Shown: positions 132-55,151, counted from the stretch's first letter. The stretch: DNA of 64,000 nt from Heptranchias perlo (GCF_035084215.1 NC_090340.1:15128001-15192000); one strand, 5' to 3'. Translations and numbers: made by a program. Notes: generated by a model from the letters alone, not told the origin.

Positions 132-175
132 GTAAACAGGAAAGTGTAACAACACCGCACCGCAATGAAGAGCTG
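132..175 (+). CDS. Receptor gene A (inhibitory-type IgSF receptor; 5' part lies outside the window), cytoplasmic exon 1: xKQESVTTPHRNEEL
   Basis: Acceptor ttcattcccag|GT and donor GAGCTG|gtagg. The exon is 44 nt, phase 1 to 0, and homologous to 50974-51017 on the minus strand. Confidence 0.75.
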
Positions 176-697
176 GTAGGTTCATAACATTCATCCAGGA
201 AGAGGGTTCGAATTTAAATAAATATTATTATGATGGAGATATTTCATCAAAAGTATTTGTCCCTCTTTGATGCGTCATTCAAATCGTGTTTTGAGAATTA
301 TTTGGCACTTGTTGCGATGCTGGTGTAACTGGTTAAACAAAGGATAAAAACAAGGTATGATGGTAGCTTTATTCAACATATACATAGGTAATAATTACTG
401 GTAAATCCATCTAATCGTTGCTTTTGGAATCTGATATTACACGTCTAAGATTCTAAAATTATCTCTTGTTTAATCATATCTGTAACACTGCATGGTAGTG
501 AAAATTGACAGGTTGGAATGTGAGTTACAGTGGACACACGATTTACCGGCCTTAATATTCGTACATTTTTAAATATATTCACTGTGGTTTTATTTGAAGT
601 CCCGATCATTCTGTGCAATATTCCATCAGCAGTCTGTAAACTGGCGAAGGCAATGAACTAGCCACATAACAAGACAATTTCCTTCTGGCCCATGCAG

Positions 698-799
698 GCA
701 GCAGAGAATGAGATAGCGCCTTATGCTGCATTAGATATGAGCAAAGCGAAGAGAACCCCAGGACGTAAACGTGAAGAGGCGAGGGCAGTATACGCTCAG
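698..799 (+). CDS. Gene A cytoplasmic exon 2: AAENEIAPYAALDMSKAKRTPGRKREEARAVYAQ
   Basis: Acceptor ccttctggcccatgcag| and donor GCTCAG|gtaggg. The exon is 102 nt, phase 0-0, the same length as its homolog at 50334-50435, and carries two Tyr motifs. Confidence 0.8.
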
Positions 800-1005
800 G
801 TAGGGCCGAGAAGCAGATAAGGGAACATAGACCACCACCGTGGCACTAACATTCATGTAATAGCGGAGTATTTTGGATTGTGCTGACTTTAACCGTGTAT
901 TGTATCTAAAGCTATTTGTGAGTTATTCGGATGACTACTTTGAGCAGCAGTCCACAAACTGTTAAAAAGACCAATCAACAACACTTCCAAACATTGGCGT
1001 TTCAG

Positions 1006-1179
1006 GTAAAACAAGGAAGAGCCCGTGACAAGCTGACGTACGCGACTCTAGAATTGTCTGGCTCCGGGAAAGCGAGGAAATCTAAAAATAACCGGCAAAG
1101 CACAGAATATGCCGAGCTTCAGGGGAAAAAACAAAGAAGAGTAACAGAGGTCGTCTACACAGAAGCAAGAACCAAATAG
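1006..1179 (+). CDS. Gene A terminal coding exon with ITIM (LTYATL), ITSM-like motif (TEYAEL) and VVYTEA
   Basis: Acceptor ggcgtttcag|GTA. Open frame VKQGRARDKLTYATL...STEYAEL...VVYTEARTK* (3' part of ORF 931..1179). Paralogous exons at 49959-50126 and 18640-18825. Confidence 0.85.
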   Translation, partial: VKQGRARDKLTYATLELSGSGKARKSKNNRQSTEYAELQGKKQRRVTEVVYTEARTK

Positions 1180-1483
1180 TGATGCAATCTTAGGCACATA
1201 AATCAGTTTACTGGTGTATATTAATTTATCCCGCAGCCATATCAATTCCATTGATATCAATGAAAAAGAAAATCTGTTGGTTCCTATAAAAGGCCGGAGA
1301 TCCGATGCAGCAGTTTACCGCCTAAGCAGTGTCAGTGTGAATTGTCCCCATGTGAATGTTTATCCATGTTATCCAATCACCATGTATCCGAGATGTAACA
1401 CATTCCAGTATCGTGGTATATAATACACCTGTATATTTGGTTCCATTATTTGGGGATTATTAGTCAGCAATATAGTTACTTGT

Positions 1484-3745: not shown

Positions 3746-5087
3746 CAGGGCACATTAAATGTAAGTAAATGTTCAACAACTAGGATTATGTTTCAAATTA
3801 ATTTCACATTCGGTTTTCTCATCTAATAACTGCATAATGTTTGAAGAATAATGTTTCAAAATTCTTTTGCCAACGAGTTAACCAATTGTGATACATTCGT
3901 GAAAAGTCAACGAGAGGGCGCTCAGCCAGCCCTATGTTCTAAAAGGATGGAAACGATTAGCTGAAGATTTCGCCTTGTGTTTTTTGCTATACCAACAAGC
4001 GTTGCTGAATATCGACACCGGCGCGTGGGTTTCTAAAGCTAAGTAAAGACATGGCTCGTTTGCTCATCTCCGCTGTAGCAGTTCAAGTTTTAAATTTAGC
4101 TGTTAATTGCAACACTCTGAAAACTTAGCGAATGTTGCACAGCAGCAGTTATTACGCCTCGTGGTTCAGTGTAATTGTATCAACGGCCAATGCTCACATT
4201 TATTCATCCACACGCGCGTTTCAGTACATTAAAGCTGGCTAAACCACTGACACTTGGCTTAATTTAACGTACTGCAATACTATAATATTGATCACACTTG
4301 CTTCCAACTTGTAAGTTGTTGACAGCTGTCTAAAATGTCAAAAGTATTTGTTTAACGTGAAGCATATTTTATTCAATCGCCTTTTAATTGTAACAATTTT
4401 AAGAGGAGAGCCATTATTTAAAATTGCCCCTTGTCATGGTGTTTTACACATTAGGAATGCGTGTTGTAGGCGACCAAGGAGTGTATTGTGCATAGAACAT
4501 CTTATGGGATATCATTTAGTTCAACTTCATCCTCGTCGAAAGCATGACATCGGGTAGAAAGTAATTGTAATTTCACGGTAAGGGGAAGTTTCATATAAAA
4601 TCCGTGCTCCCAGTATGCCTTCAAGCAGCACTGTAACAATATATATATTTATCGTGACCGAAGATAGCAGTCAGTGTATAGGTATTTCCCTTTATAGCAC
4701 GAAAGGCTTAACCGACAGATTAGAAGAATGCGCTTCCCCTTTAAGAACACGCTGCCTTTGATTATGTTCAAAACGGTTCAAAAGTTAAGGAACACAAAAA
4801 GAAACAAGTATACAGACCAACATGCATGCACGTGTGATTACGTGCACGCATTCACACACACACCAAATTTATACTTTCTGTGCATACCCAGTGGAAAATT
4901 CCAACCTTGAGTATTAAAATGGATATATAATAAAAATCAAATATCAATAAGAATGGACAATCGTTTTGGCAGACTCAAAGGGGATAAAATCCAATTATTT
5001 CTCTATCTCTATCTTAACCCAGCACCAACACGTTGTAATTTCTCACCCATCCTAATCAGAAATGTATTTATTTCACCGATTCTGCAG

Positions 5088-5300: not shown

Positions 5301-5309
5301 ATTTTTTTT

Positions 5310-7148
5310 AGCACAGAGCTTGCTGAGTGCAAGAGTTGGGTGAATTTGCTGAACGGAGTGAATTGCAAACTGAGTGAGCACTTTAAAAGCGGAAATTTGG
5401 TGAGAGTAGAAATTAATAAGAGGGGTAGGAGGATCTAAATAATTTGTACCAAGGGGAAAAAGTAAATAAGCAAATATATCAATAAATAATCAGAAATTAA
5501 TTCGAATTAAGGGGATAAAATTAGAATTAACTAAACAGAGGATACCAACTTTAAAGGGATCTGAATTGCATTAATGAAAATCTGGTATACATAAAAATAA
5601 TAAATAGGATTTAAGTGGCTATTAACTAAAACATATATGCAACATGTGGCATACATATAAAACATAAGTAGATCGACTTTTAATTAAAATGTTTCGCCAG
5701 CAAAGACGCATTGCCTGCAATTCCGATGTTCTGGATAATTAAATGTGCAAGTGTCTCCAGCTGCTCGAACTCAAGCTCAGGGTTTCTGAGCATGAGGAGA
5801 GAATGGAGTCACGGCAAGGCATACGGGCGGGTGAGAATTTCCTGGATCGCATGTTCCAGGAGGTGGTCACTCCGCAGCCAGAGAGGAGGATAGTAAGTCG
5901 GTGGTCATTCGGCGGGGTGGGAAGAGTTAGGCAGTGCAGGAATTCTCCAGGATTGTGGCACTCTCTAACCAGTTTTCAGTACTGAATACTGGTGAGGGTG
6001 ACAACACCTCGGGGGATTGCAGTCCCGAGCATATCCACGTTACCATAGGCATATGACTGCACGGGGTGGGGGGCGGGGCGGCACTGCAAAGTGTAGAAAC
6101 GCAGTTGATACAGGGGATTCGATAGTCGGGGGGATAGACAGGCGTTTCAGCAACCGCCGACGTGAGTCTTGCATGGCGTGTTGCCTCTCGGGTGCCAGGG
6201 CAAAGGACATCACCGAACAAGTGCAGAATATTTTGCGTGGAAAAAGGGGACAGCTCGAAGGCGTGGTCAATTTTGAATCCATGACATTGATAGGAAAAGG
6301 GCTGAGGTCCTATGGACAGAGTTTCAGAAGCATGGATGAAAATAAAAGAGCAAGACTCAAAGGTAGTAATCTCTGGATTACTCCCAGTATCACGTGCTAG
6401 TGACTATGGGACCAGTAAGATAAGACAGGATAACGCATGGCTGGAGAAATGGTGTAGGAGGGAGGACTTCAGATTCCTGGGGCACTCGGACCAGTTCTGG
6501 GGCAGGAGGGACCTGGACAACAGGTTGGACCTCAACAGGGTTGGGACCAATGTCCTTGTGGAGAGTTTAACTGGTGCTGTGGGGGATGGTGTAAACTAAT
6601 TTGGCAGTTGGAAGGGCACCAGAATGAAGCATTAGAGAGGAGAAACAATCTGCACCGAGAACTGGGAGAGACAAACTGCATTAGAATAAAGAGTAGTTTA
6701 GAAATAGGAGGGATCAGACAGGGGTGAATGCGTGGTAGTCTAAGCTGGGCCTGGAATGCATGTGTGTAAATGCACGGAGCGTAGCAAATAAGGTTGGTGA
6801 GTTTCAGGCACAAGTAGCTGCATGAGATCATGATATAGCAGCAATAACGGGCACTTAGCTCAAACAAGGGGAGGAATTTGCACTTAATATTCCTGGCTAC
6901 ACGATATTTAGGAATGATAGGGAAAGATAAAAATGAGGGGATGGCAGCATTGATCAAAGATACTGCTCCAGCACTAGAAGGGGATGATGTACATGAAGTT
7001 TCAAAGACAGAATATATTTGGATAGAATTAAGGAACAATAGAAGAATTATTATGCTGCTGGATGTATACTATAGGCCTCTAAAATAGTGGGAAGGAGATA
7101 GAGGATCACATTGGCAGGCAACTTGCAGAAAGATGCAAGAATTATAGA
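5310..7148 (+). mobile_element. CR1 LINE, 5' part (5'UTR, ORF1 esterase, start of the APE endonuclease); interrupted by a younger CR1
   Basis: GDSIVGGIDRRF...CCLSGARAKDI and KVVISGLLPV (ORF1 SGNH-like); IWIELRN...YYRP (APE). The element resumes at ~11108. Confidence 0.85.
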
Positions 7149-10100
7149 ATCATAGAATCATAGAAGTTTACAACATGGAAACAGGCCCTTCGGCCCAACA
7201 TGTCCATGTCGCCCAGTTTATACCACTAAGCTAGTCCCAATTGCCTGCACTTGGCCCATATCCCTCGATACCCATCTTACCCATGTAACTGTCCAAATAC
7301 TTTTTAAAAGACAAAATTGTACCCGCCTCCACTGCTGCCTCTGGCAGCTCGTTCCAGACACTCACCACCCTTTGAGTGAATAAATTGCCCCTCTGGACCC
7401 TTTTGTATCTCTCCCCTCTCACCTTAAATCTATGCCCCCTCGTTATAGACTCCCCTACCTTTGGGAAAAGATTTTGACTATCTACCTTACCTATGCCCCT
7501 CATTATTTTATAGACTTCTGTAAGATCACCCCTAAACCTCCTACTCTCCAGGGAAAAAAGTCTCAGTCTATCCAACCTCTCCCTATAAGTCGAACCATCA
7601 AGTCCCGGTAGCATCCTAGTAAATCTTTTCTGCACTCTTTCTAGTTTAATAATATCCTTTCTATAATAGGGTGACCAAAACTGTACACAGTATTCCAAGT
7701 GTGGCCTTACTAATGTCTTGTACAACTTCAACAAGACATCCCAACTCCTGTATTCAATGTTCTGACCAATGAAACCAAGCATGCTGAATGCCTTCTTCAC
7801 CACCCTATCCACCTGTGACTCCACTTTCAAGGAGCTATGAACCTGTACTCCTAGATCTCTTTGTTCTATAACTCTCCCCAACGCCCTACCATTAACGGAG
7901 TAGGTCCTGGCCCGATTCGATCTACCAAAATGCATCACCTCACATTTATCTAAATTAAACTCCACCTGCCATTCATCGGCCCACTGGCCCAATTTATCAA
8001 GATCCCGTTGCAATCCTGGATAACCTTCTTCACTGTCCACAATGCCACCAATCTTGGTGTCATCTGTAAACTTACTAACCATGCCTCCTAAATTCTCATC
8101 CAAACCATTAATATAAATAACAAATAACAGCGGACCCAGCACCGATCCCTGAGGCACACCGCTGGACACAGGCCTCCAGTTTAAAACAAAAAACCCTCTA
8201 CAACCACCCTCTGTCTTCTGTTGTCAAGCCAATTTTGTATCTAATTGGCTACCTCACCTTGGATCCCGTGAGATTTAAACTTATGTAACAACCTACCATG
8301 CGGTACCTTGTCAAAGGCTTTGCTAAAGTCCATGTAGACCACGTCTACTGCACAGCCCTCATATATCTTCTTGGTTACCCCTTCAAAAAACTCAATCAAA
8401 TTCGTGAGACATGATTTTCCTCTCACAAAACCATGCTGACTGTTCCTAATCAGTCCATGCCTCTCCAAATGCCTGTAGATCCTGTCTCTCAGAATACCCT
8501 CGAACAACTTACCCACTACAGATGTCAGGCTCACCGTTCTGTAGTTTCCAGGCTTTTCCCTGCCTCGCTTCTGAAACAAAGGCACAACATTTGCTACCCT
8601 CCAATCTTCAGGCACCTCACCTGTAGCTGTCGATGATTCAAATATCTCTGCTAGGGGACCTGCAATTTCCTCCCGAACCTCCCATGACGTCCTGGGTTAC
8701 ATTTCATCAGGTCCCGGAGATTTATCTACCTTGATGCGCGTTAAGACTTCCAGCACCTCCCTCTCTGTAATATGTACACTCCTCAAGACATCACTATTTA
8801 TTTCCCCAAGTTCCCTAACATCCATGCCTTTCTCAACTGTAAATACCGATGTGAAATATTCATTTAGGATCTCACCCATCTCTTGTGGTTCCGCACATAG
8901 ATGACCTTGTTGATCCTTAAGAGGCCCTACTCTCTCCCTAGTTTCTCTTTTGCCCTTTACGTATTTGTAGAAGCTCTTTGGATTCTCCTTTGCCTTATCT
9001 GCCAAAGCAATCTCATGTCCCCTTTTTGCCCTCCTGATTTCTCTCTTAACTCTACTCCGGCAATCTCTATACTCTTCAAGGGATCCACTTGATCCCAGCT
9101 GTCTATACATGTCATATGCCTCCTTCTTCTTTTTGACTAGGGCCTCAATCTCCCGAGTCATCCAAGGTTCCCTACTTCTACCAGCCTTGCCCTTCACTTT
9201 GTAAGGAATGTGCTTACCCTGAACCCTGGTTAACACACTTTTGAAAGCTTCCCACTTACCAGACGTCCCTTTGCCTGCCAACAGACTCTCCCAATCAATT
9301 TCTGAAAGTTCCTGTCTAATACCATCAAAATTGGCCTTTCCCCAATTCAGAATTTTAACTTTTGGGCCAGACCTATCATTCTCCATAGCTATCTTAAAAC
9401 TAATGGAATTATGATCACTGGTCCCAAAGTGATCCCTTACTAACACTTCTGTCACCTGCCCTTCCTTATTTCCCAAGAGGAGGTCAAGTTTTGCCCCCTC
9501 TCTAGTCGGGCCATCCACATACTGAATGAGAAATTCCTCCTCAATACACTCAACAAATTTTTCTCCATTCAAGCCCCTAATGCTATGGCTGTCCCAGTCA
9601 ATGTTGGGAAAGTTAAAGTCCCCTACTATTACCACCTTATTTTTCTTGCAGCTGTCTGTAATCTCCTTACATATTTGCTCCTCAATTTCCCGTTGACTAT
9701 TTGGGGGTCTGTAGTACAATCCTATCAAAGTGATCTCTCCCTTCTTATTTTTCAGTTCTACCCATATAGACTCAGTGGGCGAACCCTCGGATATATCCCC
9801 TCTCACTACTGCCGTGATGTTCTCCCTAATCAAGAACGCAACTCCCCTTCCTCTCTTACCTCCTGCTCTAGCTTTCCTATAGTATCTGTAACCTGGAACA
9901 TTGAGCTGCCAGTCCTGCCCCTTCCTTAGCCATGTTTCAGTAATAGCTATAACATCCCAGTCCCATGTACCCATCCATGCCCTCAGTTCATCTGCCTTGC
10001 CCATCAGACTTCTTGCATTGAAATAAATGCACTTTAATCTAGATTTCACTTGGTCTTTGCCCTGCTCTCTCAGACCATCTGTCCGGTCATGTTTTGTACA

Positions 10101-11100
10101 CTCTCCCTTACTGCCTTTTGTTTCTGTCACCACTTTACTTCCCACTGACTTCCTGCATCGGTTCCCATCCCCCTGCCACATTAGTTTAAACCCTCCCGAA
10201 CAGCACTAGCAAACACTCCCCCTAGGACATTGGTTCCAGTCCTGCCCAGATGCAGACCGTCCAATTTGTACTGGTCCAACCTCCCCCCAGAACCGGTTCC
10301 AATGGCCCAGGAATTTGAATCGCTCCCTCTTGCACCATCTCTCAAGCCACGTATTCATCCTAGCTATCCTGTCATTCCTACTCTGACTAACCCGTGGCAC
10401 TGGTAGCAATCCTGAGATTACTACCTTTGAGGTCCTACTTTTTAGTTTAACTCCAAACTCCCTAAATTCAGCTCGTAGGACCTCATCCCGTTTTTTACCT
10501 ATATCGTTGGTACCTATGTGCACCACGACAACTGGCTGTTCACCCTTCCCCTTCAGAATGTCCTGCAGCCGCTCTGAGACATCCCTGACCCTTGCACCAG
10601 GGAGGCAACATACCATCCTGGAGTCTCGGTTGCGTCCGCAGAAACGCCTGTCTATTCCCCTCACAATCGAGTCCCCTATCACTATAGCTCTGACACTCTT
10701 TTTCCTGCCCTCCTGTGCAGCAGAGCCAGCCACGGTGCCATGAACCTGGCCGCTGTCACCTTCTCCTGGTGAGCCATTTCCCCCAACAGTATCCAAAACG
10801 GTATACCTGTTTTGGAGGGAGATGACCGCAGGGGACCCCTGCACTGCCTTCCTACTCTTCCTCTGTCTGTTGGTCACCCATTCACTATCTCCCTCAGTAA
10901 TTTTTATCTGTGGTGTGACCAACTCACTGAACGTGCTATCCACGACTTGCTCAGCATCGCGGATGCCCCAAAGTGAGTCCATCCGCAGCTCCAGAGCCGT
11001 CAAGCGGTCAAACAGTAGCTGCAACTGGACACACTTCCCGCAGGTGAAGGAACCAGGGACACAGGAGGGATCCCTGAATTCCCACATCCCACAAGAGGAA
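7144..11100 (-). mobile_element. Young, nearly full-length CR1 LINE (ORF1 zinc-finger/esterase plus ORF2 APE-RT), 5'-truncated, nested in an older CR1
   Basis: ORFs 10206..11177, 8697..10181, 8241..8615 and 7231..8169 carry APE motifs (NARS, ITETWL, GDFN, SDH) and RT motifs ([16 protein letters not shown]). ORF2 is broken only by stops at ~8697 and ~8241 and a frameshift near 8185. (TTCTATGA)n tail at 7144-7165. Confidence 0.95.
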
Positions 11101-11107
11101 GTGGGAT

Positions 11108-18304: not shown

Positions 18305-18639
18305 ACACGATATCACACACATGACTTTTGAAACAGTGGATGTAATAAGCAATAAATACTGTATATTGTAGACACTGTCTTCTGGATAATTGAACTATTT
18401 TAACAACCATTATGGATTTGGGATGATCTATAGCTTTACTTCCAAAGTACTTATTATAGGGGAATGGGTGTTTTTTTTAAATAAAACGGGTGTTGCCTGA
18501 GGTAACTTGCTAACTCAATAATATAAATATAATAGTCTAAGGACTATTCAAGTAACATGAGGACCGTACTCTATTTCATGAAGCATTATGTCGATTTATG
18601 AAGTTAACAAGATAACGTTACAACACATTGCTTTTATGG

Positions 18640-18825
18640 AACATGCAAACAGCAGTTGATAACCCGATGACTTACACTGCCGTCGTTCTGCCTGGTTCTA
18701 AGAAAAATGGAAAACCTAGAAGGAAGGAAAAGAGCACAGAGTACTCCGAGATGAAGACGATACACTAGAGGAGAGAAGCACCGATCGTCTACACAGAACC
18801 AAGATTCGAATTATACCAATTATAG
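18640..18825 (+). pseudogene. Orphan terminal ITIM/ITSM exon of another receptor paralog
   Basis: NMQTAVDNPMTYTAV...KSTEYSEMKTIH*RREAPIVYTEPRF aligns to the gene A terminal exon. The acceptor is mutated (ttttatgg instead of tttacag), there is an in-frame TAG at 18766-18768, and a 3'UTR-like match lies near 18960-19005. Confidence 0.8.
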
Positions 18826-38037: not shown

Positions 38038-38099
38038 CTAAGGATATGTTCTCGTGGAATTATGAGCAGCAGAGGCAGAGATTGCCAACCGTCCTTTAC
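38038..38099 (-). CDS. Gene B candidate terminal exon: GKGRLAISASAAHNSTRTYP* (short tail, no ITIM)
   Basis: Acceptor ttttatttttaattgtcag|GTAAAG. Phase 1 matches the TM exon, and the start resembles cag|GTAAAC of the paralogous cytoplasmic exons. An alternative acceptor at 39553 would end the protein at SSIEG*. Confidence 0.5.
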
Positions 38100-39765: not shown

Positions 39766-39879
39766 CTTCAATGGAAGACATTTTTACGTGGTCCACAATA
39801 ATACCCGTCAGTGCAAGAATTACCAAGAAAGCCAGGAAAAGCCGAACAAACATGAGGAGCGAGATGCTGAAACTGTGAC
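39766..39879 (-). CDS. Gene B transmembrane exon: GHSFSISLLMFVRLFLAFLVILALTGIIVDHVKMSSIE (Arg-containing TM)
   Basis: Acceptor ctaatcctacaccgtag| and donor ATTGAAG|gtaaga. The exon is 114 nt, phase 1-1, and encodes a hydrophobic stretch with an Arg codon at 39842-39844. It is absent from the ORF track. Confidence 0.85.
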
Positions 39880-41093: not shown

Positions 41094-41387
41094 CTTTAAA
41101 GGTGTAGCTGACACCGGCGGGCACCACAAGAGAGACATGAGATACCAAACAGGTATAAACAACCCCGCTCCGGGCAGGCTGTACATCTTCCAAAAAAGTG
41201 GAAACCTCATATAGTCCTTTGGCGGTCCTGTTTTTCACCGTTTCTATTCCAGTCTGAATTTCGACACCATCTCTTCGCCAGGAGATTCCTAAATGCTCCG
41301 GGTAAAAGGCAGCCGTTTTACACTCGAGTTTCAGAGAAGCCGATGAAATCCCTTCAACAGGAGCGATTTCCAGGGGGGTTGGGGGAA
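41094..41387 (-). CDS. Gene B Ig C1-set domain exon
   Basis: Acceptor cttttctgttaaag| and donor TTTAAAG|gtaaga. Open 294 nt: VPPTPLEI...LKLECKTAAFYPEHLGISWRRDG...GLYEVSTFL...YTCLVSHVSLVVP, with the C1 hallmarks FYP and YTCxVxH. Confidence 0.92.
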
Positions 41388-42330: not shown

Positions 42331-42505
42331 GGGGGACAAACTCGTCCTGGGTTGGTAGTTCACAGCGGGCGATAGCGAATTGGCAGCCCGTTTTACACTC
42401 AGCTCGATTAACTTCAATGGAGAAGAAAACCGGGCGGAATGTAAAACGGACTGCCGATTAGTTATCGCCTGTAATGCGCTACCGCGCAAGTCAGATTTAT
42501 ACCCC
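42331..42505. mobile_element. Palindromic MITE (~175 bp) in the V-C1 intron of gene B
   Basis: Arms gcgatagcgaattggcagcccgttttaca and tgtaaaacggactgccgattagttatcgc, with GGGG...CCCC termini. Confidence 0.7.
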
Positions 42506-43299
42506 AATACCACTTTGCTGTGAACAATGCCAATGGAATTCTTCTAGGTAAACACTGTGAAGATTTCACCTCTAGCATTAATCCCAAAAAACATATTTTA
42601 GGATCCTCACCAATATTTAGACCCCCGCTTAGGCTATGGCATCAAGCACAGACCCCCAGAATGGTGAGATCTTTGGGCACTATCTCAAGATCTGAAGAAG
42701 GGTGCTGTGTTCTGAGTCAGAGCTTAAACAACTGCCTTCTGATGATTAGTCCAACATAGCCGTTCGATGTGAGGTATAACAGAGAAGATACTTCAGCCGA
42801 GTCAACCTTACATCCAAACTATTGGATGTTTTAGACCACTTTCCAGAGCTTTGGAGTTCTGTAAATTACATTGTTCCCTTCTCTATGGAAACAATTTGAA
42901 TTTTACCTCCTTTAGTTAGTAGAGTGAGAATTATGTTTACTAACTCTCCAAGTGTTTATTCTGAAAAAATCCCCGTGACCCAAGCTTATGTCATCTTTCC
43001 AGTTGGTGAGCCAGAGCCCATAGGAAGGACAGCCTCACTGGGTTTTCTCTCTTTTGGCTGAAGCATGGCTTATAAACTGCCCTCACATCACTGTGAGGGT
43101 TTCATCCGGCAAGGATGCATCAAACGCCATTTTTCATGTGGGTGTTTATTGATTAGTATCTCTAGCATTAGTATGAATATGGAATCGAAGATGAATTCCT
43201 GGTTCATTCTTCATTTCGGAGATGTCTTGTTCTGTGAGGATGATTCGAGTATGATCCGAGACCACTTTTTGGTCAATACTTGGACTATGTCATGACCTA

Positions 43300-44560
43300 T
43301 CTCCTCTGACACCCAAAAGATTTTATTTTTTAATGCAACCTGTGGCATTAGGAATACTAGGAATATAATCCCATGTACTGGGTTGGTATATCCTCATAAT
43401 ATCCGCCAGGCCCATCTCACTGCTAAATATAGAAATTTTCCCTTCGACAACAACAGCAGATCTGAAGCAAGATTAAAATTAACACCTTTTATAATTGACA
43501 GTTTTGGTAACTCTCCTTTGCACACTATTCGGGTATTGTGTCTGCCCATTATTAGGGACAAATACATTAACCATAATTAATCTAACATTACAATATATCT
43601 GCCCTCCAGTCCTTCGGTGTTCCATTATAAATGTACTCGACTTATGAATTAATATTACCACTATAAATTTCCTCAAATAAAAAAGGTCAATGTATTTACT
43701 TCACGAAGGTCTTCTTGGATTTTGAAGACCCTTTCTCATCAAAGTGGATCCGCTGTTGGAAGGCTACTCCCATCTTTAATCGGCTTAAATATTGCAAAGG
43801 TTTAACGCAGTTCAGTGAATTTTGGATTCCCTTCACATTCCAGGTGACCAGCTTAATACGGCTACTACTGATCACCTGTGTTTTAAATTTTAAATCCTTG
43901 ACTTGCATTCCCTTGACCCACCTCCAGTTACCTTAAACCTGAAAGCAACCTGTAGTCCCTAGGAGAAATAAAATGCATGTTGATTGTTCATTTACCGATT
44001 TCGCGCTACCAGCAGGAATTCTCGTCTGGCTGCTTTGCAAATTGAGAGATTGCGGGCAGTAGCATGAACTCGGAAAATTCACTGTAAAGCAATAAGGGAA
44101 ATTCTATCAAACTGTATCAGACGCTGCTGCACCTCATTGATGTCGGGGAAGTTCCTTAACTGAATACTTTCCGTACTTCAGTCGCCGTTCTTTCTTGTTG
44201 CCTCAATGATCTTAGGTTTGTCTTGGAATCTGAGCGTTTTGAAAATGATTGTTCTTGGGGATTTGCGTGTTATAGCAGGAGCCAGGACCCCCACCATTTC
44301 CATCTTTGCAGATTCTGATCCCACCCGAAGCTCTGATTAGATATCTTGAAGTTAACCTATGGTAATCTTCTCTTCCACCACTCTGGAAGATTAACCAGTT
44401 GAAGATTATTATTCTTGGAATGAATTTTCCAATCCCCTTTTTGAATTATCAACTGCTGCCGGTATTTTCCTTCAGCACATCAATCTCTTTCAAGACCAAC
44501 TCTCATGAATATTCTGCCTCTAACAGCCTTTCCTCCAGCTTGCAATCTATTTTCAGTCAA
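43300..44560 (-). mobile_element. Degraded L1-clade LINE (ORF1 and APE N-terminus) in the V-C1 intron of gene B
   Basis: IKLVTWNVKGIQN (L1 APE start); LENHSKNNNLQLVNLPE and PRTIIFKTLRFQDK (L1 ORF1). Confidence 0.7.
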
Positions 44561-45123
44561 TTTCTTTCTGAGAAAGGATATATTTTGCTAGGCCCCACTC
44601 TCGCTTTTATTTATGAAATTTGTGTGCGTGTGGGTGTTTATCGCCCTGATCCTCGTTTTAGCACAAAATCATTTGAAGATTCGACCCCACTCCCCGCCAA
44701 AGAGCAGCGTTACGAATCGACCATTAGCAAAGTGCAGGCAGTTGGAGTATTATTACCTGAAAATAATTATAATTTATAAATTACTCCGCTTTGAATCAAT
44801 TTTATTATAATAATATCACATTTCACGAGTCTGGTGCGATGACTGCATGTACTCGTATACGGGGCATACAACAGGGGCTAACTGTCCTCCCTTATCTGAT
44901 TATATTCATTATTATATTATATCCCATTCTGTTTCAACGAGATTACATTCTGCATTTAAAATGCGTATTTAAAGTATGATATAAAATTCGGTACTTAATA
45001 CACATATAAAAACACAAATGTGAAAGTGCTGCAGATTCTATTAAAGTGGTTGTCCATCCCTTAATTTTTTTGAGTTTTAAAGATAGCTAAAACTCTCCCA
45101 CTCCCCTGTACAATGACACTTAC

Positions 45124-45429
45124 CGTACACAGTAATCAGGGAGCCAGCTCCATCTCCAATAGATTTTTCCTGATGTTTTACTTTACAGTAATACATTCCG
45201 GTGTCTTCGATATTCACATTCACAACATCAAAGGAACCACTTCCCTTTTTGACATTGAATTGCTTTCTGTTGTCTGGTTCCAGGAACTTATTCTCGCCCT
45301 GTCTCCACCAAACAACATCGGGAGCATCTTGAAATAGTGGAAAAGTGCAGAACAAGGAAACATTTGCACCTCTGGCAACATTCACGTGTTTCGGGAATTG
45401 ATCCACTTTGCTCGAAGTTACTTCGACGT
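45124..45429 (-). CDS. Gene B Ig V-type domain exon with germline-joined J-like strand
   Basis: Acceptor ttattttttgatag| and donor GTGTACG|gtaagt. Open 306 nt: VDQFP...NVSLFC...VVWWRQG...EDTGMYYC...GDGAGSLITVY. Confidence 0.93.
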
Positions 45430-45643
45430 CTATCAAAAAATAAACAAGTAAACTGATACAATAGTGTGTGTACTTTCAGGGGAAGAAACAAAAATTACGA
45501 CTTAGAAATTGAAAAACAAGAAAATTAGCAAAATTAATAAAATAATGAGAAAGACGAAAAAAAGAAATGTGCATAAAATATGACGATTTTTTAAACACAA
45601 GGTTTTTTCGATAAGCATAAAGCTGTAAGATAAACAAACACAC

Positions 45644-45698
45644 CTGTGTAAATAATTCCGAGTAAAGATATGCACAAAAGTGCGGAGCTCACCGCCAT
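45644..45698 (-). CDS. Gene B leader exon: MAVSSALLCISLLGIIYT
   Basis: agaATGG Kozak-like start, hydrophobic signal peptide and donor ACAG|gtgtgt. The exon is 55 nt, phase 1, the same size as the gene C leader. Confidence 0.85.
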
Positions 45699-45776
45699 TC
45701 TGAGTGACGAACATTAAACTGGCCAGAAGCTGCAAGGAACCTCCAAGCTCCTGGTCCTTTGGAAGCCACGGGTTTG

Positions 45777-45809: not shown

Positions 45810-46493
45810 TCTAAATGTGCAATTTCAACAGATGCATTTCCTTTGATAAGTCAGACCACTCAGATACAACTGTCACCAAGAACTGTGGTCGGAACCAGTT
45901 AGATCCAAACTGAGAGCAAATAGAAAGCATCACATTTTACCCGAAATCAATTCTGATTCTGTCGGTTAACAGCATATGATTGTTTTCTAAAACCAATGCT
46001 ATAGCCAATTAGTTGTGAAGGATGATTAGTTTGGTGAGCAAATCCGGAAGAATGGGACGAAGTTCTTTCTAGTTTTCACATATTAGCGACGTCCTAAATA
46101 TAGGGTAAAGATTCACAATGTTCGTTATTTCTAGCGAGATCCCAAGTGCATTCTACGATATTCCCATTTGAGAGCTGGGGGCCTGGTCAGTATTGTGGGC
46201 GGAGACTCGTTCAGAATCAGGTTTGAATTGACCCTCTTAAAAGACTCAGGATACTTGGGCGTATTGTAGTTACACGTGTAACTCACTTGCGCCCAAAATG
46301 CCGCGGTCTATGAAGTCATGTAACTTGTTTGCGCCCAGATTGCACTTCTCTCTCGGCGCAAATGCGGAGAGAACTCCAGGCTGTGAGTCTTCCTTTCCTG
46401 TTCTTGTGGTGATAAAGCACTGTTGATTGTCCTGTTGGACTTGGTTCCGCCTATCCCTTCAACACACCCTGGTCAGTGTAAAATAGAAACTCA

Positions 46494-46682
46494 TGTCCTT
46501 TGTTTAGTCTGTAAAGCCAATGCTTAGAAATATTGTTAATTGGTCGTTTTGCCAGTTTGTGGACTGCTGCTCAAAGCAGACATCAGAAGAACACACAAGT
46601 AGCCTTACAAACAACTCACGGCCAAAGTCAGCACAAGCATCTGCCCTATGCTGTCGTAGGAATGTTGGTGTTACGCTGGTGA
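46494..46682 (-). pseudogene. Duplicated fragment of the last intron and first codons of the terminal ITIM exon
   Basis: Closely matches 50112-50300 (compare ORFs 46520..46777 and 50138..50347). The acceptor is intact and is followed by TKQRT*. Confidence 0.85.
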
Positions 46683-46689
46683 GCAAGCA

Positions 46690-47240
46690 GTCAAGCAGAC
46701 TTCAATCATTTAAAGTTAATATTCTGTATGTCATTGTAAATAAAAGAATGTTTTTAAATAAAATGTCAAAGAATTAATTGAATTAAATTAAAGAGACAGA
46801 AGGGAAAAGTAAAAACAAATTAACGTTTTAGTTTTAAAAGTTGTTTTTAATGACCATAAACTAATAAAATAAGGAGTAATATGCGTCTCCACGTTTTGAT
46901 AAGATAATGTTTTTTTGTTTGGCAGTCATTAAAGCATACCGCGCTGTTAAAACTTAGTTTAGACTTGGTATTTTAAGTGTACCTGTTCGATGGCATAATT
47001 AGTTACTTTCCAGCTGGGCTGATAAGCAAGTTGGCGCTTTTTCAGTGATTGATTGGCTTGCAGGTGCGATGGCGCATTCATTCCAAGCTGTCATATCGCC
47101 TGCGAAGCACTGGGAGCAAAATCAGGATTTCCGCGTTTGAATACGCATATGCAAACGTGGGAACTTGCTCCTTCAATTCGCTACGAAAAACGGAGGGAGC
47201 TGTTGAGCTCCTCCGTTATTTCGGGAGCGATTTCTGGCCC
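46690..47240. mobile_element. Probable non-autonomous DNA-transposon fragment
   Basis: AT-rich body ending in gatttctggccc, similar to the Harbinger-like termini elsewhere in the window. Confidence 0.35.
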
Positions 47241-49958: not shown

Positions 49959-52900
49959 CTATTTGAATCTTCCTTCGGAGTAGGCAATCTCGGTTACTCT
50001 GTTTTTTTTGTCTGCAGCTGGGCATACTCTGCTTCTTTCGTCATTTTTGCATTTCCCCGTTTTCTCTGAGCCAGTCGCTGCTAGAGTCACGTACGTCAGC
50101 TTGTCACGAGCTGTCCTTTGTTTGATCTGTAAAGCCAATGTTTAGAAATATTGTTAATTGGTCGTTTTGCCAGTTTGTGGACTGCTGCTCAAAGCAGTCA
50201 TCAGAAGAACATGCAAACAGCCTTAGATACAACACAGGGCCAAAGTCAGCACCGACATATGCCCTACACTATCGCATGAATGCTAGTGTTACACTGGTGA
50301 TCTATGTTTCCCTGATGTGTTACTCAGCCCTACCTGAAAGTACATAATCCTCTCCTCTTCACGTTTACCTCCTGGAGTTTTCCTGTCTCTGCTCAAATCT
50401 AATGCAGTATGATGCAGGGTCTCGGCCTCTGCTCCCTGCATGGACCAGAAAGCAAATGTTTGGTTATGTGGTCTGTTCATTGCCTTCACCAGCTTACGTA
50501 CTGCTAATCAAACATTGAACAGAATTACCTGGGCTAGAGGTCCAGTGCACAAATCATAATTAATATATTGGCTTAAGTGCGAATATTAAGGCCGGCGAGT
50601 GCTGTGGTCAATATGACTAATATTTAAACCTGTCAATATTCTCTCTGCAAAACTGTGTTACAGAAATATTTGAGTAAGAATAAAGTTTTTTTTTTCAAAT
50701 ACAAAGACTAGATGAATCTATAAACAATTATTACCTCGGTACATTTTCAACGAAACTGGCAGTTTTCTTTTCCGCTATTTAACCATTTTTACCAGCAAAA
50801 CATCGGATGCCAAATACGTTTCTAACCACGATTTGAATGATTCACTAAGACCGGACAAATACTTTTAGTAAATTGACTTAAACTGTTCTGACATGATTAT
50901 GATAAAATCTCTCCATTATAGCAATCTTTCTTCACATTTGAACCCTCTAGAGAGGACGAATGAATGAACGTGTCAGCTCTTCACCACGGGTCGGTCCCAC
51001 TGCACGTCCCTGTTTACCTGGAAAATAATGAAATTAATGATATTGAAAGATTGAAATATTTACTCAGTTTCCATGTTAGTGATTTCAAAGACATTTCTCG
51101 AGTCCGTGCAAAACCGAACATGATTTTCAATTTCAGATTTTACTGACAGTGTTAGAATCCCTGGCCTTGCAGCGATCCGCAATGGTGTAAAACCATTCCT
51201 CTTCGGAGCCTCACACCGATTCACTCAATCTAGTTGCGCCTCCACAACGGGATGGGTTGATAAGTGATTGTGTGTCAGGCTACATTTAATTTATCACCCT
51301 GCAAAGTGGACATTTCTGTTGCAAATACCCAGCTAATTATTTCCGTTACTACGGAGATTCTATGAGGATTTCTGCGTCTTAAAGTGTATTTGGAACAATC
51401 TGCGCTCCCTGAAAACAGATAACACCGCCTTCAACTGGAAGTCTTAATGGAATTCTCCTTCCCATGTGTTACCCAGAGACTTTCACTAAACGTGGGGTTT
51501 CGGACTAAAATCAAGCTCTTACAGTAGATCTTACTTTCATTATTCTGCAGTCTGCACCGCCTCCCAATGAAGACCATGCGCACCAGAAACTCCAATCCAC
51601 CCACCGCACACCCAGGAGCCCAGAAGTAAAGGGACACATCAATGACACTAGCTGCAAGATTAATAGGAACATTAAGTTATGCCGGGCGTTTGCTAAAAAA
51701 AGGCGTGAAGATCGTTTATTGGTTAAACTATGGTTGTTGCTTTCAGTAACTCTGCAGTACAGAACGCCAATAATGAAGTTTAAATAAAAAATGTTAATTT
51801 TTTTTGGATATAATATTTGAAGTAACTTATTCATCGAATGGACGAGATATCCTGGATTAATCTGCGAAGCGGGCTACCGGTTTCGGGATCTCAAAACACT
51901 GTTTCAGGAAAGTAAGAATGTGAGAGTGATAAATTTCCCTGGACCGAATGGCGTGTTCTTATCCTTTACCTTTCTTATTTATTAACATATGATTTGAAGA
52001 AATCGGAGGGAATTTGGTGACACGCGTTTCTCCGTTCACCGCACGAAATTCTGGATTGCAGCAATCAGCTAAAAATCCCCATTCAATTATCCGCAATGTG
52101 ATTATTAAAGTAAGAATGTCACTGAGTAGTGAAGAAAATCAACGGACGATGTTTTATTGATTAATGTCTGGCGAGGCTAAGAGTTCTTAATAAAATGATG
52201 CATTGAACCGGCTGTACTGTAGCCAGGTTTCGGGCACAGCTTAATTGAGATTTGTGAGACAGGTCCCAATGGAACCCACAGTGGCATGGAGAGGTGTGGG
52301 TTACAAGTTGGACAGAGGGTTAATTTCGGAATTTTGCATTGGAAGTAGCAGAAAGGGGGATCAGGATCGAAACCTCATTGGGAGAAGCCCGAGATCAGAC
52401 AAATTGACTGCAGCTCCTTTTAACAGTCTTCATGCAGGGGTAGCCGGCAATGGTAAAGAATAAAACCATTTTGACGTGGAAACAAAAAAAGTGAAAAATT
52501 ATTAATAGTAAGCAGGAGAGGAAATATAATCGGATACAGAAGATTAACTCCTGTTTATATTTGTTATACGGCAAATAGAGGAATTTGAAGACAAATAGGG
52601 CGTAATTGAGAATATTTGTGTGGCGGACGATATAACACGGATTCACAACACATCGTGTTCAAATATGTTATATATTAAAACAAGAATTCTATGGTTTCGT
52701 TGATATTTCCCATGAACCGCCTTCATGATTATCAAAATGTACAAACTCTACGATGTAGCTCATTGCGAATTTGTAAGTAGCTGGACTGTTGGCCTCGTAC
52801 CTGGGTTAGATTTAATATAGGTAATAACAGCTGGAGTCTCAAGGGTGACATGAGATACCGATCAGGTATATTTGGCGCCACTCGAGACAGGCTGCGTCTC

Positions 52901-55151
52901 TTCCAAAGTGCTGGAAACTTCATACAGCCCCTCAATGATCTGCCGTTTAACGGTGTGTATTCCTATTGCAGTTTCGAAGCCATTTTTATACCAAGTGAGG
53001 GTGACATTCTTCGGATAAACTCAGCCGTTTCACACACAAGAGTCAGAGGCGCAGATGAATTCCATTCAGCTGTCAGAGAGACAATAGTCAGTGGAATTGG
53101 GGCAGTTGCGGAACAGAAAATGAGCAACATCGAGTTATTGGACACCAATGGAAGAAATTAAATATGATTCTGATTTACCTTCGGTCCATTTCATTTTAAC
53201 AACAATATTCCAAAGAAAAGCCTCCTGTCGCTTTAATGTTAGGCACAGCATCTACACACACTTCATCTGTATCTCTCATCGTCGCCGGCATCTGTTCAAT
53301 TTTACCTTCGCTCTCGAGTTCAAGACATTGAGATATTCAACAGACACGTCGCAACGATTGTTTTTTAATGTCTGCGTTTCATAATCCAAATAATTAAATA
53401 AATAAACCCTGAGGGAAAGATGTCATGCCCAGTCCCTCCATGTTTGGTACTCACAGATAGACAGTGACGACTAAGCTGCACAATGTCGATGATAAAACGA
53501 GGGGATTAGTAGGTATCGGACAGATCTCACAGCCGAGGCATGAAATTGGTGAAAGAAACTTTATTCGGTCGAAACTTAGGCGGTTTCAGCAACACAGTTC
53601 CTGCGTATTGTATTTATTGGACGTTAGTGAGGTGACAACGTTGAGAATTGCGAGTTCCAGTTTTTTGAGTGAATCCGATGATCAACAGTTAGTCGCACGC
53701 TGGCTTTCAAATCCGTGACGCCAACGAGCCAATAATTATATGAGAATTAATTTCGGGAATGTTAAACCCCAGAGACAGCAGTGGGGGCAGAGAGAGCTTC
53801 CAATTATATTCTCTGGAATTTAGAAGAATGTGAGGTGATCTCATTGAAACATATAAGATTTTAGGATGGCTTGACAGGGTAGATGCTGAGAAGATGTTTC
53901 TCCTGGATGGAGAGTCTAGAACTAGGGGACATAGTCTCAGGTTAAGGGATTGGACATTTAGGACTGAGATGAGGAGGAATTTCTTCACTCAGAGGGTAGT
54001 GAATATTTGGAATTCTCTATCCCAGAGTGCTGTGGATGCTCAGTCGTTGAGTATATTCAAGGCTGAGTTAGATAGATTTTTAGATTCTGAGGGGATCAAG
54101 GGTTATGGGATCTGGCGGGAAAGTGGAGTTGAGGTCGATGATCATCCATGATCTTATTGAATGGCGGAGCAGGCTCGAGGGGCCGTATGCCGTTCTCCTG
54201 CTCATATTTCGTATCTTCTTATGTTCTTTTGTTCAAAATAGGCTCAGGGGCGTGTATATGGTGGTTAAGGCTCATTAATATAAACAATGTTCAGTCAGTT
54301 ATATGCTTGAAATTAGTTCCGATTTTCCGCTATCAGACATCTGGTGCATAGATTGTCTTTGGAGCGATAGTCAATTTTTTAATATTGATACTATTTTCAG
54401 CATTCTGCGTATGAAGGGTTATATTGTATCTCTAATTAGCATTTCTATACAGAGGACACGAACATTCAACTTAACTTTCTCGCAAAATGTAATAATATAA
54501 ATCATTATACTGTCAAAATTTGTGCATTAAACAATTTTAAAACATCTCAGTTTGTTGCGTTGGATATGTTTGCCACAGTCCCGTACTCCGGTTTTTCACA
54601 CTCACTATGCACAATTAGATGTGATCCGGTTCCATTTCCTCCAAAGCATCAGTGACACATCACTGCGCAGTGATAGATTCCCGAGTCTTGGAAAGTCGCG
54701 CTCAGCAACTGAAAGAAACCGCTCGCTTTACTTTTCAGACCGAATCGTTTTCTGTCATCGGCACTTGTGCGCAGGTATTCATTCTCACCCTGTTTCCACC
54801 AATACACTCTTACCCAGGGATGGTCTTGAGAGATGGGGAATATGCAGTAGAAGGTGATGTTTCCCCCTTTGGATACATCCGCTTGTTCGGGCGCTTGAGT
54901 CACTCTGAACGAAGTGTGATCCACAGCTGTCAAAAAACATAGTCAAGTAAGGATTAATTTTATTAGATGGGACATGGAGATGGAAGAGAGAAAGAAGAAT
55001 CGATATAGAGGAATTACGGTTCACTAAATTAATATGGAAACTATTTCGGAAGCATTTTATAAATTAAAGTAGCTGCTATATTGAATAAAGAGGTACCTGT
55101 GCAAATAATCCACCGAAGATTCAGGCAAAGAAATGACAAATTCGTCCACAT
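49959..55151 (-). pseudogene. Receptor pseudogene C: leader-VJ-C1-TM-3 cytoplasmic exons (inhibitory-type architecture)
   Basis: Exons: 55097-55151 (MWTNLSFLCLNLRWIICT); 54606-54926 (V, TGA at 54649-54651); 52801-53105 (C1, acceptor AG>AA, 1-nt deletion in FYP, Cys>TGA at 52862-52864); 51535-51651 (TM); 50974-51017 (donor GT>AC); 50334-50435; 49959-50126 (LTYVTL). Confidence 0.92.
53800..54225 (+). mobile_element. CR1 3' fragment in the V-C1 intron of pseudogene C
   Basis: GESRTRGHSLRL...RRNFFTQRVVNIWNSL. Confidence 0.85.

What the first reader, a model, noticed from the sequence alone, without database searches (positions are those of the whole stretch)
132..55151. A paired activating/inhibitory family of non-rearranging VJ-C1 immunoglobulin receptors
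Seen in the sequence: genes B and C share homologous leader (both 55 nt), V(J) and C1 exons. C continues into a TM and three cytoplasmic exons that match the ITIM/ITSM tail of gene A exon for exon (44/102/168-174 nt). B instead continues into an unrelated Arg-bearing TM and a short tail. Established knowledge: related ectodomains with opposite signalling modules define paired receptor families (KIR, LILR, SIRP, CD300, teleost NITR, chicken CHIR). C1-set domains are largely restricted to Ig, TCR, MHC/B2M, tapasin, SIRP and a few related molecules. Inference: this is a shark innate or NK/myeloid paired-receptor cluster whose one-V-one-C1 chain resembles an unrearranged Ig light or TCR chain. Automated pipelines probably label it only as SIRP-like or Ig-light-like.
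Basis: partly seen in the sequence, partly recalled or inferred. Interest (0 to 1): 0.9.

Follow-up and report, generated by a model that had tools for sequence, protein, structure and literature searches.

The report
Shark paired VJ-C1 immune receptor genes
This stretch of a sevengill shark chromosome holds one working, one dead and one cut-off gene of a large cartilaginous-fish family of antibody-shaped but non-rearranging cell-surface receptors that come in an "on" version and an "off" version, much like the SIRP receptors of mammals.

Summary
The window is almost surely Heptranchias perlo.

- **Gene B** (45698-38038, minus strand) is intact. It has a leader, a single-exon V with a J-like strand, one C1-set domain, an Arg-bearing TM and a short tail. 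Spliced contigs of one public run confirm three of its four junctions. The leader junction is not confirmed.
- **Gene C** (55151-49959) is a pseudogene. It has a stop in V, a lost C1 acceptor, a 1-bp deletion, Cys-to-stop in C1, and a lost donor.
- **Gene A** is seen only as an intact ITIM/ITSM-like tail. Its ectodomain could not be checked.

B and C ectodomains are only 42% (V) and 47% (C1) identical, so they are not a tight pair. The family-level claim holds. Relatives in at least 15 shark, ray and chimaera species carry related ectodomains on either ITIM tails or the same Arg-TM module. One same-species example is P0193/P0211.

NCBI labels them SIRP-alpha-like, Ig-lambda-like, tapasin-like and so on. 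None of my ten literature searches found a description of the family.

The scan had already noted this family at eight other places in this genome. I class it as a new variant of a known kind.

The parts
132..175 (+). Gene A, 44-nt cytoplasmic exon (phase 1). Acceptor AG and donor GT are intact.
698..799 (+). Gene A, 102-nt cytoplasmic exon with two Tyr motifs (YAAL, YAQV). Splice sites are intact.
1006..1179 (+). Gene A, last coding exon (171 nt plus stop). It holds a canonical ITIM (LTYATL), an ITSM-like TEYAEL and VVYTEA.
18586..18819 (+). Orphan relic of a family last exon. It has weakened Tyr motifs and an early stop, and no other family exon lies near it.
38038..38099 (-). Gene B, last exon (short tail plus TAG).
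   Evidence: The loose end at the 3' side of the TM exon in run X1 reads into this exon. It matches the end of P0158.
39766..39879 (-). Gene B, TM exon (114 nt) with Arg in the outer third of the membrane span, followed by Asp-His.
   Evidence: Joint to C1 in run X1.
41094..41387 (-). Gene B, C1-set exon (294 nt).
   Evidence: Pfam C1-set E 7.8e-9. Joints on both sides in run X1.
45124..45429 (-). Gene B, V exon with the J-like G strand in the same exon (306 nt). No break or RSS.
   Evidence: Pfam V-set 39.7 bits and I-set 37.7 bits. Joint 45124 to 41387 in run X1 with no mismatches.
45644..45698 (-). Gene B, predicted split leader (55 nt). It is hydrophobic and ends in the GIIYT motif shared by family leaders. 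Not covered by RNA.
   Evidence: Depth 0.
46285..46683 (-). Orphan fragment: a copy of the intron in front of the family's last exon plus about 10 nt of that exon. The same kind of sequence is built into the NCBI model P0162 of a B paralogue.
47004..47094 (-). First exon used by the NCBI model of gene B (P0158). It has an ATG and a GTAACT donor but encodes no signal peptide.
49959..50126 (-). Gene C, last exon (165 nt plus stop). LTYVTL is kept and the TEYAEL equivalent is lost.
50334..50435 (-). Gene C, 102-nt exon. The first Tyr is replaced by His.
50974..51017 (-). Gene C, 44-nt exon. Its donor reads AC instead of GT at 50973-50972.
51535..51651 (-). Gene C, TM exon (117 nt, frame kept). 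Glu and Arg stand inside the span where the intact paralogues P0170 and P0193 have hydrophobic residues.
52801..53105 (-). Gene C, C1 exon with three lesions. The acceptor is AA (53107-53106). The exon is 305 nt, with one T missing near 53019-53017. TGA stands at the second Cys (52864-52862).
54606..54926 (-). Gene C, V exon (321 nt). An in-frame TGA at 54651-54649 lies between the Cys of strand F and the J-like motif.
55097..55151 (-). Gene C, leader exon (55 nt).
   Evidence: 16 of 18 residues match P0193.

Best explanation
The window is a piece of a Heptranchias perlo chromosome. It carries part of a large cartilaginous-fish multigene family of germline-joined (non-rearranging) VJ-C1 single-pass membrane receptors. 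The family comes with two interchangeable signalling ends.

- **Inhibitory end:** an uncharged TM followed by three small exons encoding several tyrosine motifs, including a canonical ITIM and an ITSM-like motif.
- **Activating-type end:** a TM exon with an Arg in the outer third of the span, followed by Asp/Glu-His and a short tail without signalling motifs.

The window holds:
- gene B: activating type, intact, transcribed and spliced
- gene C: inhibitory type, dead
- the intact inhibitory tail of gene A
- two orphan exon scraps

Inferred mechanism:
- The V domain binds a ligand. Its CDR3-like loop is the most variable part of the family.
- In inhibitory members, Src-type kinases phosphorylate the tail tyrosines, which then recruit SHP-1/SHP-2-type phosphatases.
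- In Arg-TM members, the Arg pairs with the membrane Asp of an ITAM adaptor. From the position of the Arg, this would be FcR-gamma/CD3-zeta-like rather than DAP12-like.

Shown: the gene structures, the lesions, the splicing of B, the two tail types on related ectodomains, and the family's spread across species. Inferred: ligand binding, phosphatase and adaptor recruitment, and cell type.
For: - **Gene models and splice sites:**
- **Domains:** V-set/I-set and C1-set.
- **RNA:** run X1 contigs join 45124 to 41387 and 41094 to 39879, with CT..AC ends on the plus strand and no mismatches. They read on from the TM exon into the last exon.
- **Species:** P0158 of Heptranchias perlo matches exons V, C1, TM and last.
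- **Family size:** the V exon finds 837 proteins at E up to 0.001 and 20 at up to 1e-30. I read 39 of the 150 listed.
- **Taxa:** every one of the 17, 46 and 43 word-search hits whose organism is shown is a shark, ray or chimaera.
- **Two tail types on related ectodomains:**
  - P0193 (ITIM) and P0211 (Arg-TM), same species, 81% identical over 146 aa.
  - P0065 (Arg-TM) and P0168 (ITIM), 81% over 221 aa.
  - B's nearest relatives in Heterodontus carry ITIM tails.
- **Ectodomain tree of 84 rows:** the 7 Arg-TM rows need 5 changes (at least 3 forced by well-supported branches), against a shuffled mean of 6.6.
- **TM exon conservation:** B's TM exon is 84% identical to P0211's, while the C1 domains are 56% identical.
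- **Variability:** the CDR3-like loop reaches about 3 bits, against a V-domain mean of 1.9.
Against: - The predicted leader of B has no RNA cover.
- The NCBI model of B starts at an upstream exon (47094-47004) that encodes no signal peptide.
- The one contig reaching the 5' end of the V exon runs on into 29 letters. A 24-letter piece of them has no match in the window at up to 3 mismatches.
- The RNA status of run X1 is a guess on record. I infer it from the spliced joints. It is one sample only.
- No inhibitory partner with a B-type ectodomain was found in the same species.
- B and C share only 42%/47% identity.
- Gene A's ectodomain is unseen.
- There is no evidence on cell type, adaptor, phosphatase or ligand.
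- 41 of the 84 tree rows could not be labelled, because many gene models are truncated.
Confidence: 0.72

Rival explanations
1. These genes are simply the cartilaginous-fish SIRP genes, orthologues or co-orthologues of tetrapod SIRP-alpha/beta. They would then be a known family under a poor automatic name, with one C1 domain lost or never gained.
For: - NCBI names many members SIRP-alpha-like or SIRP-beta-like.
- The protein-language-model neighbours of P0165 are two SIRP-alpha clusters, score 0.97 with 215 of 256 features shared.
- The family profile aligns to SIRP-alpha d1-d2 as one V-C1 stretch of 64.9 bits. It also aligns to d3 at 49.6 bits, including the shared VPPT start of the C1 domain.
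- Both are paired receptor families (SIRP review PMC12975943, passages read).
Against: - The same profile scores Ig lambda and kappa V-C stretches higher (73.5 and 72.3 bits) and UrIg2 at 54.8 bits, so SIRP is not singled out by sequence.
- These proteins have one C1 domain, not two.
- The TM charge is Arg near the outer face, not the residue that links SIRP-beta to DAP12.
- No synteny could be tested.
- A 2026 survey dates the SIRP family to tetrapods (PMC13262535, table passage read).
Confidence: 0.3
2. Gene B is transcribed but makes no receptor. Its transcripts start at upstream non-coding exons and skip the leader, so the locus is a decaying edge of the cluster, like its neighbour C.
For: - The NCBI model P0158 starts at 47094-47004 without a signal peptide.
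- The leader has depth 0.
- The contig at the 5' end of V continues into letters a 24-letter piece of which is absent from the window.
- Its neighbours are a pseudogene and exon scraps.
Against: - All five exons of B are open and all splice sites are intact.
- The leader starts with ATG, is hydrophobic, and ends in the motif shared with other family leaders.
- The run is small (115 million letters), so missing cover means little.
- The V, C1 and TM exons carry every residue that is invariant in the family alignment.
Confidence: 0.15
3. Gene B is an immunoglobulin light-chain gene, as NCBI labels it.
For: - NCBI names P0158 'immunoglobulin lambda-1 light chain-like'.
- The family's V-C1 unit aligns best to light chains.
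Against: - V and the J-like strand lie in one germline exon with no gap, and are transcribed as such.
- A TM exon and a cytoplasmic exon follow C1.
- The V domain is about 100 residues and scores as well against I-set as against V-set.
Confidence: 0.02

Closest known systems
SIRP family (SIRP-alpha, -beta, -gamma) of tetrapods
   Same: - A germline V domain with a J-like strand, followed by C1-set domains.
- Inhibitory members with several cytoplasmic tyrosine motifs.
- Activating members with a positively charged TM residue and a very short tail.
- Several genes in a cluster.
- Nearest clusters by protein-language features.
- One continuous V-C1 alignment to SIRP-alpha.
   Different: - One C1 domain instead of two.
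- Arg in the outer third of the TM, followed by Asp/Glu-His.
- A much larger and more divergent gene family, with V identity between subfamilies of about 40%.
- Ligand unknown.
- Orthology untested.
UrIg and UrIg2 (non-rearranging VJ-C1 genes of elasmobranchs; PMC12227049, sections 7 and 16 and passages read)
   Same: - A single-exon VJ domain with a split leader, followed by C1-type domains.
- Found in cartilaginous fish and auto-annotated as light chain.
- UrIg2 is the best solved-structure match of B's C1 exon by summed score.
   Different: - UrIg and UrIg2 carry three or more C domains (nine to eleven in shark UrIg2).
- They are one gene each and are expressed mostly in liver and gill.
- The paper reports no ITIM or charged-TM versions: 'ITIM' and 'SIRP' occur 0 times in its text.
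- The present family has one C1 domain, many genes and two signalling ends.
Other paired Ig-type receptor families (KIR, LILR, CHIR, teleost NITR; the comparison with these rests on recall, not on a call)
   Same: ITIM and charged-TM versions of related ectodomains, clustered and fast-evolving, with frequent pseudogenes.
   Different: Those families use C2/I-type domains, or V plus I domains. None has a C1-set domain behind a VJ domain.
NKp30 (NCR3) and PRARP (non-rearranging VJ genes; PRARP recalled from the abstracts of papers that are not held)
   Same: A germline-joined VJ exon. Arg in the TM of NKp30 (recalled).
   Different: These are single V-domain proteins without a C1 domain (recalled).

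Membership tests
SIRP family | Ectodomain of one V-set and two C1-set domains | tested here: not met
   Gene B and 80 of the 82 family proteins classified have one C1 motif. No second Ig-like frame lies between V and TM of gene B. The feature is taken from PMC12975943.
SIRP family | Inhibitory member with cytoplasmic ITIMs that recruit SHP-1/SHP-2 | tested here: inconclusive
   The motifs are present in the gene A tail and in 36-37 relatives. Recruitment cannot be tested here.
SIRP family | Activating member with a positively charged TM residue that binds DAP12 | tested here: inconclusive
   A charged TM residue is present (Arg). The adaptor is unknown.
SIRP family | Orthology by tree and synteny; CD47 binding | not testable with these tools
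No SIRP sequences could be brought into a tree.
Paired activating/inhibitory Ig receptors (functional class) | Closely related ectodomains on opposite signalling modules | tested here: met
   Met for the family: P0193/P0211 are 81% identical over 146 aa within Heptranchias, and P0065/P0168 are 81% over 221 aa across species. Arg-TM rows are scattered among ITIM rows in the tree. Not met by B against C inside this window (42%/47%).
Paired activating/inhibitory Ig receptors (functional class) | Genes clustered in the genome | tested here: met
   Three members and two relics lie within 55 kb. The Heptranchias members share one 66.5-Mb record. Earlier scan notes place more copies on the same piece (not checked).
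Non-rearranging VJ-C1 genes (UrIg type) | V and J in one exon, split leader, C1-set constant domain | tested here: met
Non-rearranging VJ-C1 genes (UrIg type) | Three or more C domains; single-copy gene | tested here: not met
   One C1 exon, and many paralogues.
Immunoglobulin light chain | Separate V and J segments with RSS; secreted chain ending after C | tested here: not met
   One V(J) exon, and TM and cytoplasmic exons spliced behind C1.

The most novel reading that the evidence does not exclude
This is an ancient germline-encoded recognition system, present before sharks and chimaeras split. It is built from the same VJ-C1 unit as antibody light chains, T-cell receptor chains and SIRPs. 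It is either the sister or the forerunner of tetrapod SIRPs, or an independent survivor of the pre-RAG antigen-receptor stock. Its V domains diversified by gene duplication, mostly in the CDR3-like loop. The Arg-TM activating module has been moved between subfamilies by exon shuffling or gene conversion. If so, UrIg and UrIg2 are not the only non-rearranging antigen-receptor-like genes kept in sharks.
Probability: 0.3. Interest if true: 0.8.

Novelty: new variant of a known kind. Interest (0 to 1): 0.55.

Why it matters
Work on the origin of antibodies and T-cell receptors looks for genes that keep V and J in one exon next to a C1 domain. The 2025 UrIg2 paper treats UrIg and UrIg2 as the non-rearranging relics kept in sharks (PMC12227049, passage read).

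The family here has the same VJ-C1 unit. It is large and diversified, it occurs in chimaeras as well as sharks and rays, and it is wired to inhibitory and activating signalling like SIRPs. A 2026 survey dates SIRPs only to tetrapods (PMC13262535).

This family would give comparative immunologists three things:
- a second set of candidates for the ancestral antigen-receptor chain
- a likely early form of innate paired-receptor control
- a reason to correct the scattered automatic names (SIRP-alpha-like, lambda-like, tapasin-like, NCR3LG1-like, CD276, MHC class II beta-like)

This window adds one transcribed activating-type gene and a clear example of gene death inside the cluster.

Tried and rejected
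- **TM-exon frameshift in gene C (withdrawn).** I first counted the TM exon as 118 nt and called it a sixth lesion (note 1). Re-reading showed 117 nt with the frame kept (note 2).
- **Loose rule for activating members (dropped).** The rule 'any R/K in the TM plus a short tail' (11 rows) picked up truncated gene models. I replaced it with the homologous Arg-TM exon pattern (7 rows).
- **Looking for gene A's product.** No stored protein matches A's tail better than 56-66%. Its ectodomain stays unknown.
- **Solved-structure search with B's V exon alone.** Long multi-Ig adhesion proteins lead by summed score, so it says little. The best single-domain hits are shark V-NAR (E 1.6e-4) and scFv.
- **Literature.** Ten searches found no paper on this family.
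  - The UrIg 2023 and PRARP 2019 papers are not held.
  - Supplementary files were not opened. Table S1 and figs S1-S2 of PMC12227049, and the data sheets of PMC11599192, might list related hits. So 'not described' holds only for the searchable texts.
- **CD28/CD28H family (rejected).** It was suggested by an earlier scan note. That family has a single V domain and no C1 (PMC11599192 abstract and passages).
- **Not done.**
Exons were searched and translated one by one, and database proteins (P0158 and others) stood in for full lengths.

Full report
**What is in the window**

A search for Ig hallmarks in all stop-to-stop frames found two V-like frames and one C1-like frame on the minus strand. 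Protein self-comparison found a second C1 copy, broken over three frames. DNA self-comparison showed that 21-1249 (plus strand) is an inverted paralogue of 51127-49889, 69% over 1282 nt including introns. Further matching blocks run out to 3951-4186 against 47477-47239.

- gene A on the plus strand, of which only the tail lies in the window
- genes B and C on the minus strand

The rest of the window is mostly LINE debris. An example is the element at about 6-11 kb with esterase-type ORF1, endonuclease and reverse transcriptase.

**Gene B**

| Exon | Coordinates | Length |
|---|---|---|
| Leader | 45698-45644 | 55 nt |
| V | 45429-45124 | 306 nt |
| C1 | 41387-41094 | 294 nt |
| TM | 39879-39766 | 114 nt |
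| Last | 38099-38038 | 62 nt |

- All AG acceptors and GT donors are present, and all frames are open.
- The V exon passes the Pfam cut-offs of both V-set (39.7 bits) and I-set (37.7 bits). The C1 exon passes C1-set (36.2 bits, E 7.8e-9).
- The V exon runs without a break from strand A to a J-like G-x-G-S-x-[IL]-x-V strand, so nothing needs to rearrange.
- The TM exon carries an Arg about a third of the way in from the outside. An Asp-His pair follows the span.

**RNA evidence for gene B**

One public sample (three runs, coded X1-X3) was found. Its kind is only guessed as RNA on record. Laid on 39750-45749, run X1 gives these results:
- Contigs with no mismatches join 45124 to 41387 and 41094 to 39879. 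The skipped parts end in CT..AC on the plus strand, which is GT..AG on the gene's strand.
- The contigs read on from the TM exon into letters that match the start of the last exon.
- So three of the four predicted junctions of B are seen, and the run behaves as RNA.
- The leader has no cover.
- The one contig that reaches the 5' end of the V exon (2 mismatches) goes on into 29 letters. A 24-letter piece of them has no match in the window at up to 3 mismatches.
- A further odd joint (41384 to 45268, non-canonical ends, 2 mismatches) fits the shape of the NCBI model P0162, a 90%-identical paralogue encoded elsewhere.

**Species and existing annotation**

- P0158, 'immunoglobulin lambda-1 light chain-like [Heptranchias perlo]', matches the V, C1, TM and last exons of gene B.
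- The window is therefore almost surely from that shark's 66.5-Mb record.
- The NCBI model does not use the predicted leader. It starts at 47094-47004, an exon that encodes no signal peptide.
- The predicted leader is hydrophobic and ends in the same GIIYT motif as the leaders of other family members. I take it as the real start, but this is inference.

**Gene C**

The gene is nonetheless broken in five places:
- an in-frame TGA at 54651-54649, between the strand-F cysteine and the J-like motif
- AA instead of AG in front of the C1 exon (53107-53106), with the exon start fixed by homology to P0193
- a C1 exon of 305 nt instead of 306, with one T missing from a T run near 53019-53017
- TGA in place of the second C1 cysteine (52864-52862)
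- AC instead of GT behind the 44-nt exon (50973-50972)

Three softer changes add to this:
- The TM span holds a Glu and an Arg where the intact paralogues P0170 and P0193 are hydrophobic.
- The first tail tyrosine is His.
- The TEYAEL-type motif is gone.

An apparent sixth lesion, the TM exon length, was my miscount and is withdrawn.

**Gene A**

The three tail exons (132-175, 698-799, 1006-1179) are open, with good splice sites. They encode one canonical ITIM, one ITSM-like motif and three more Yxx[LVA] sites.
- Among stored proteins, the tail is closest to P0165 and P0193 (56-69% identity). Both are C-type inhibitory members.
- No stored protein is gene A's product.

**The family**

Scale and spread:
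- B's V exon finds 837 proteins at E up to 0.001 in the 1.84-billion-protein library.
- The 39 short, single-stretch hits that I read are V-C1 proteins of 220-490 aa.
- Three word-based searches gave 17, 46 and 43 hits. Every one whose organism is shown is a cartilaginous fish.
- The genera shown are Heptranchias, Heterodontus, Scyliorhinus, Chiloscyllium, Stegostoma, Mustelus, Cetorhinus, Mobula, Hemitrygon, Hypanus, Pristis and the chimaera Callorhinchus.
- These searches reach only close relatives, so absence from bony vertebrates is not shown.

Tail types:
- Of 215 stored proteins, 82 under 520 aa have both a VJ-like and a C1 motif.
- A loose rule labelled 37 of them ITIM-tailed, 11 charged-TM, 13 other and 21 without a TM. 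Many gene models are truncated.
- With a stricter, homology-based rule, 7 Arg-TM and 36 ITIM rows entered an 84-row tree of the V+C1 part. No row was dropped, and 41 stayed unlabelled.
- The Arg-TM label needs 5 changes on the tree, at least 3 of them forced by well-supported branches. The shuffled mean is 6.6, and 25 of 500 shuffles are as low.
- Activating-type members are therefore scattered among inhibitory ones.

Examples of pairs:
- B groups with Arg-TM catshark proteins and ITIM-tailed horn-shark proteins.
- P0065 (Arg-TM) and P0168 (ITIM) are 81% identical over 221 aa.
- Within Heptranchias, P0211 joins a C-type C1 domain to a B-type Arg-TM exon. It is 81% identical to P0193 over 146 aa, and 84% identical to B in the TM exon, while the C1 domains of B and P0211 are 56% identical.
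- The Arg-TM module is thus better kept than the ectodomains. This points to adaptor constraint, module exchange, or both.

Variability in the 40-protein alignment peaks in the CDR3-like loop, at about 3 bits against a V-domain mean of 1.9 and a C1 mean of 1.7.

**Comparison with known families**

The family profile gives these scores for one continuous V-C1 stretch:

| Solved chain | Bits |
|---|---|
| Ig lambda chain | 73.5 |
| Ig kappa chain | 72.3 |
| SIRP-alpha d1-d2 (plus 49.6 for d3) | 64.9 |
| UrIg2 | 54.8 |

- B's C1 exon alone has UrIg2 as its top match by summed score.
- The protein-language neighbours of P0165 are two SIRP-alpha clusters at 0.97. That is a lead, not proof.
- The family therefore works like SIRPs and is built like an unrearranged light chain with a membrane anchor.
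- It fails the SIRP definition on the number of C1 domains. It fails the UrIg definition on C-domain number and copy number.

**Literature**

- The UrIg2 paper never mentions ITIM or SIRP (PMC12227049; outline, sections 7 and 16 and passages read).
- The MHC paper cites VJ-C1 genes of tetrapods and PRARP (PMC10751288, passages). The PRARP and UrIg 2023 papers are not held.
- None of the ten searches found a description of this family.
- Supplementary files were not opened.

**Earlier notes of this scan**

- Two notes on this window describe gene B and its compact V domain. My results agree.
- Two notes place another VJ-C1 gene and a decaying ITIM tail 22-24 kb in front of the window.
- Eight more notes place VJ-C1-TM-ITIM genes elsewhere in this genome.
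- I did not check the notes outside the window. They fit a large dispersed family, and they mean this finding repeats what the scan has already met on other DNA.

**Verdict**

The thing is a new variant of a known kind: paired Ig-type receptors, SIRP-like, with a VJ plus single-C1 ectodomain and an Arg-TM module. Function is inferred from motifs only.

Noticed in passing
window 18586-18819 (+): A lone, degenerate copy of the family's last cytoplasmic exon. Its Tyr motifs are weakened and a stop comes early. It lies 17 kb behind gene A, with no other family exon nearby.
   Followed up: partly
window 46285-46683 (-): A copy of the intron in front of the family's last exon, plus about 10 nt of that exon. 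It lies between genes C and B, and is 87% identical to 50112-50300 and 81% to 878-1014. A homologous stretch is translated as 'protein' in the NCBI model P0162 of a B paralogue.
   Followed up: partly
window 47004-47094 (-): The NCBI model of gene B starts here, in the 3' region of pseudogene C, and skips the predicted leader. This may be an alternative non-coding 5' exon or read-through from C.
   Followed up: partly
window 45429 (5' end of B's V exon), run X1: A 158-nt contig with 2 mismatches joins the V exon exactly at its acceptor to 29 letters. A 24-letter piece of them has no match in the window at up to 3 mismatches. Read in frame, the 29 letters contain a stop. The source is unknown: a paralogue, a far upstream exon or an assembly chimera.
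   Followed up: partly
window 41384/45268, run X1: A non-canonical joint from inside the V exon to 3 nt inside the C1 exon, with three extra letters between and 2 mismatches. It has the same shape as the NCBI model P0162 of a 90%-identical paralogue.
   Followed up: partly
window about 6000-11200 (-): A LINE with GDSL-esterase-type ORF1 (PF13472), an endonuclease (PF03372) and a reverse transcriptase (PF00078), split over several frames. Related copies lie at 11.5-13.1 kb, 20.6-22.9 kb, 32.5-35.5 kb and 60.2-64 kb.
   Followed up: partly
P0210 (Heptranchias perlo, not in the window): A family member with the activating-type TM module and the Asp-His pair, but with Gln where the others have Arg.
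   Followed up: no
P0156, P0151 (Heterodontus francisci, not in the window): Gene models in which C1 is spliced straight to the tail exons without a TM exon. They may be soluble isoforms or faulty models.
   Followed up: no
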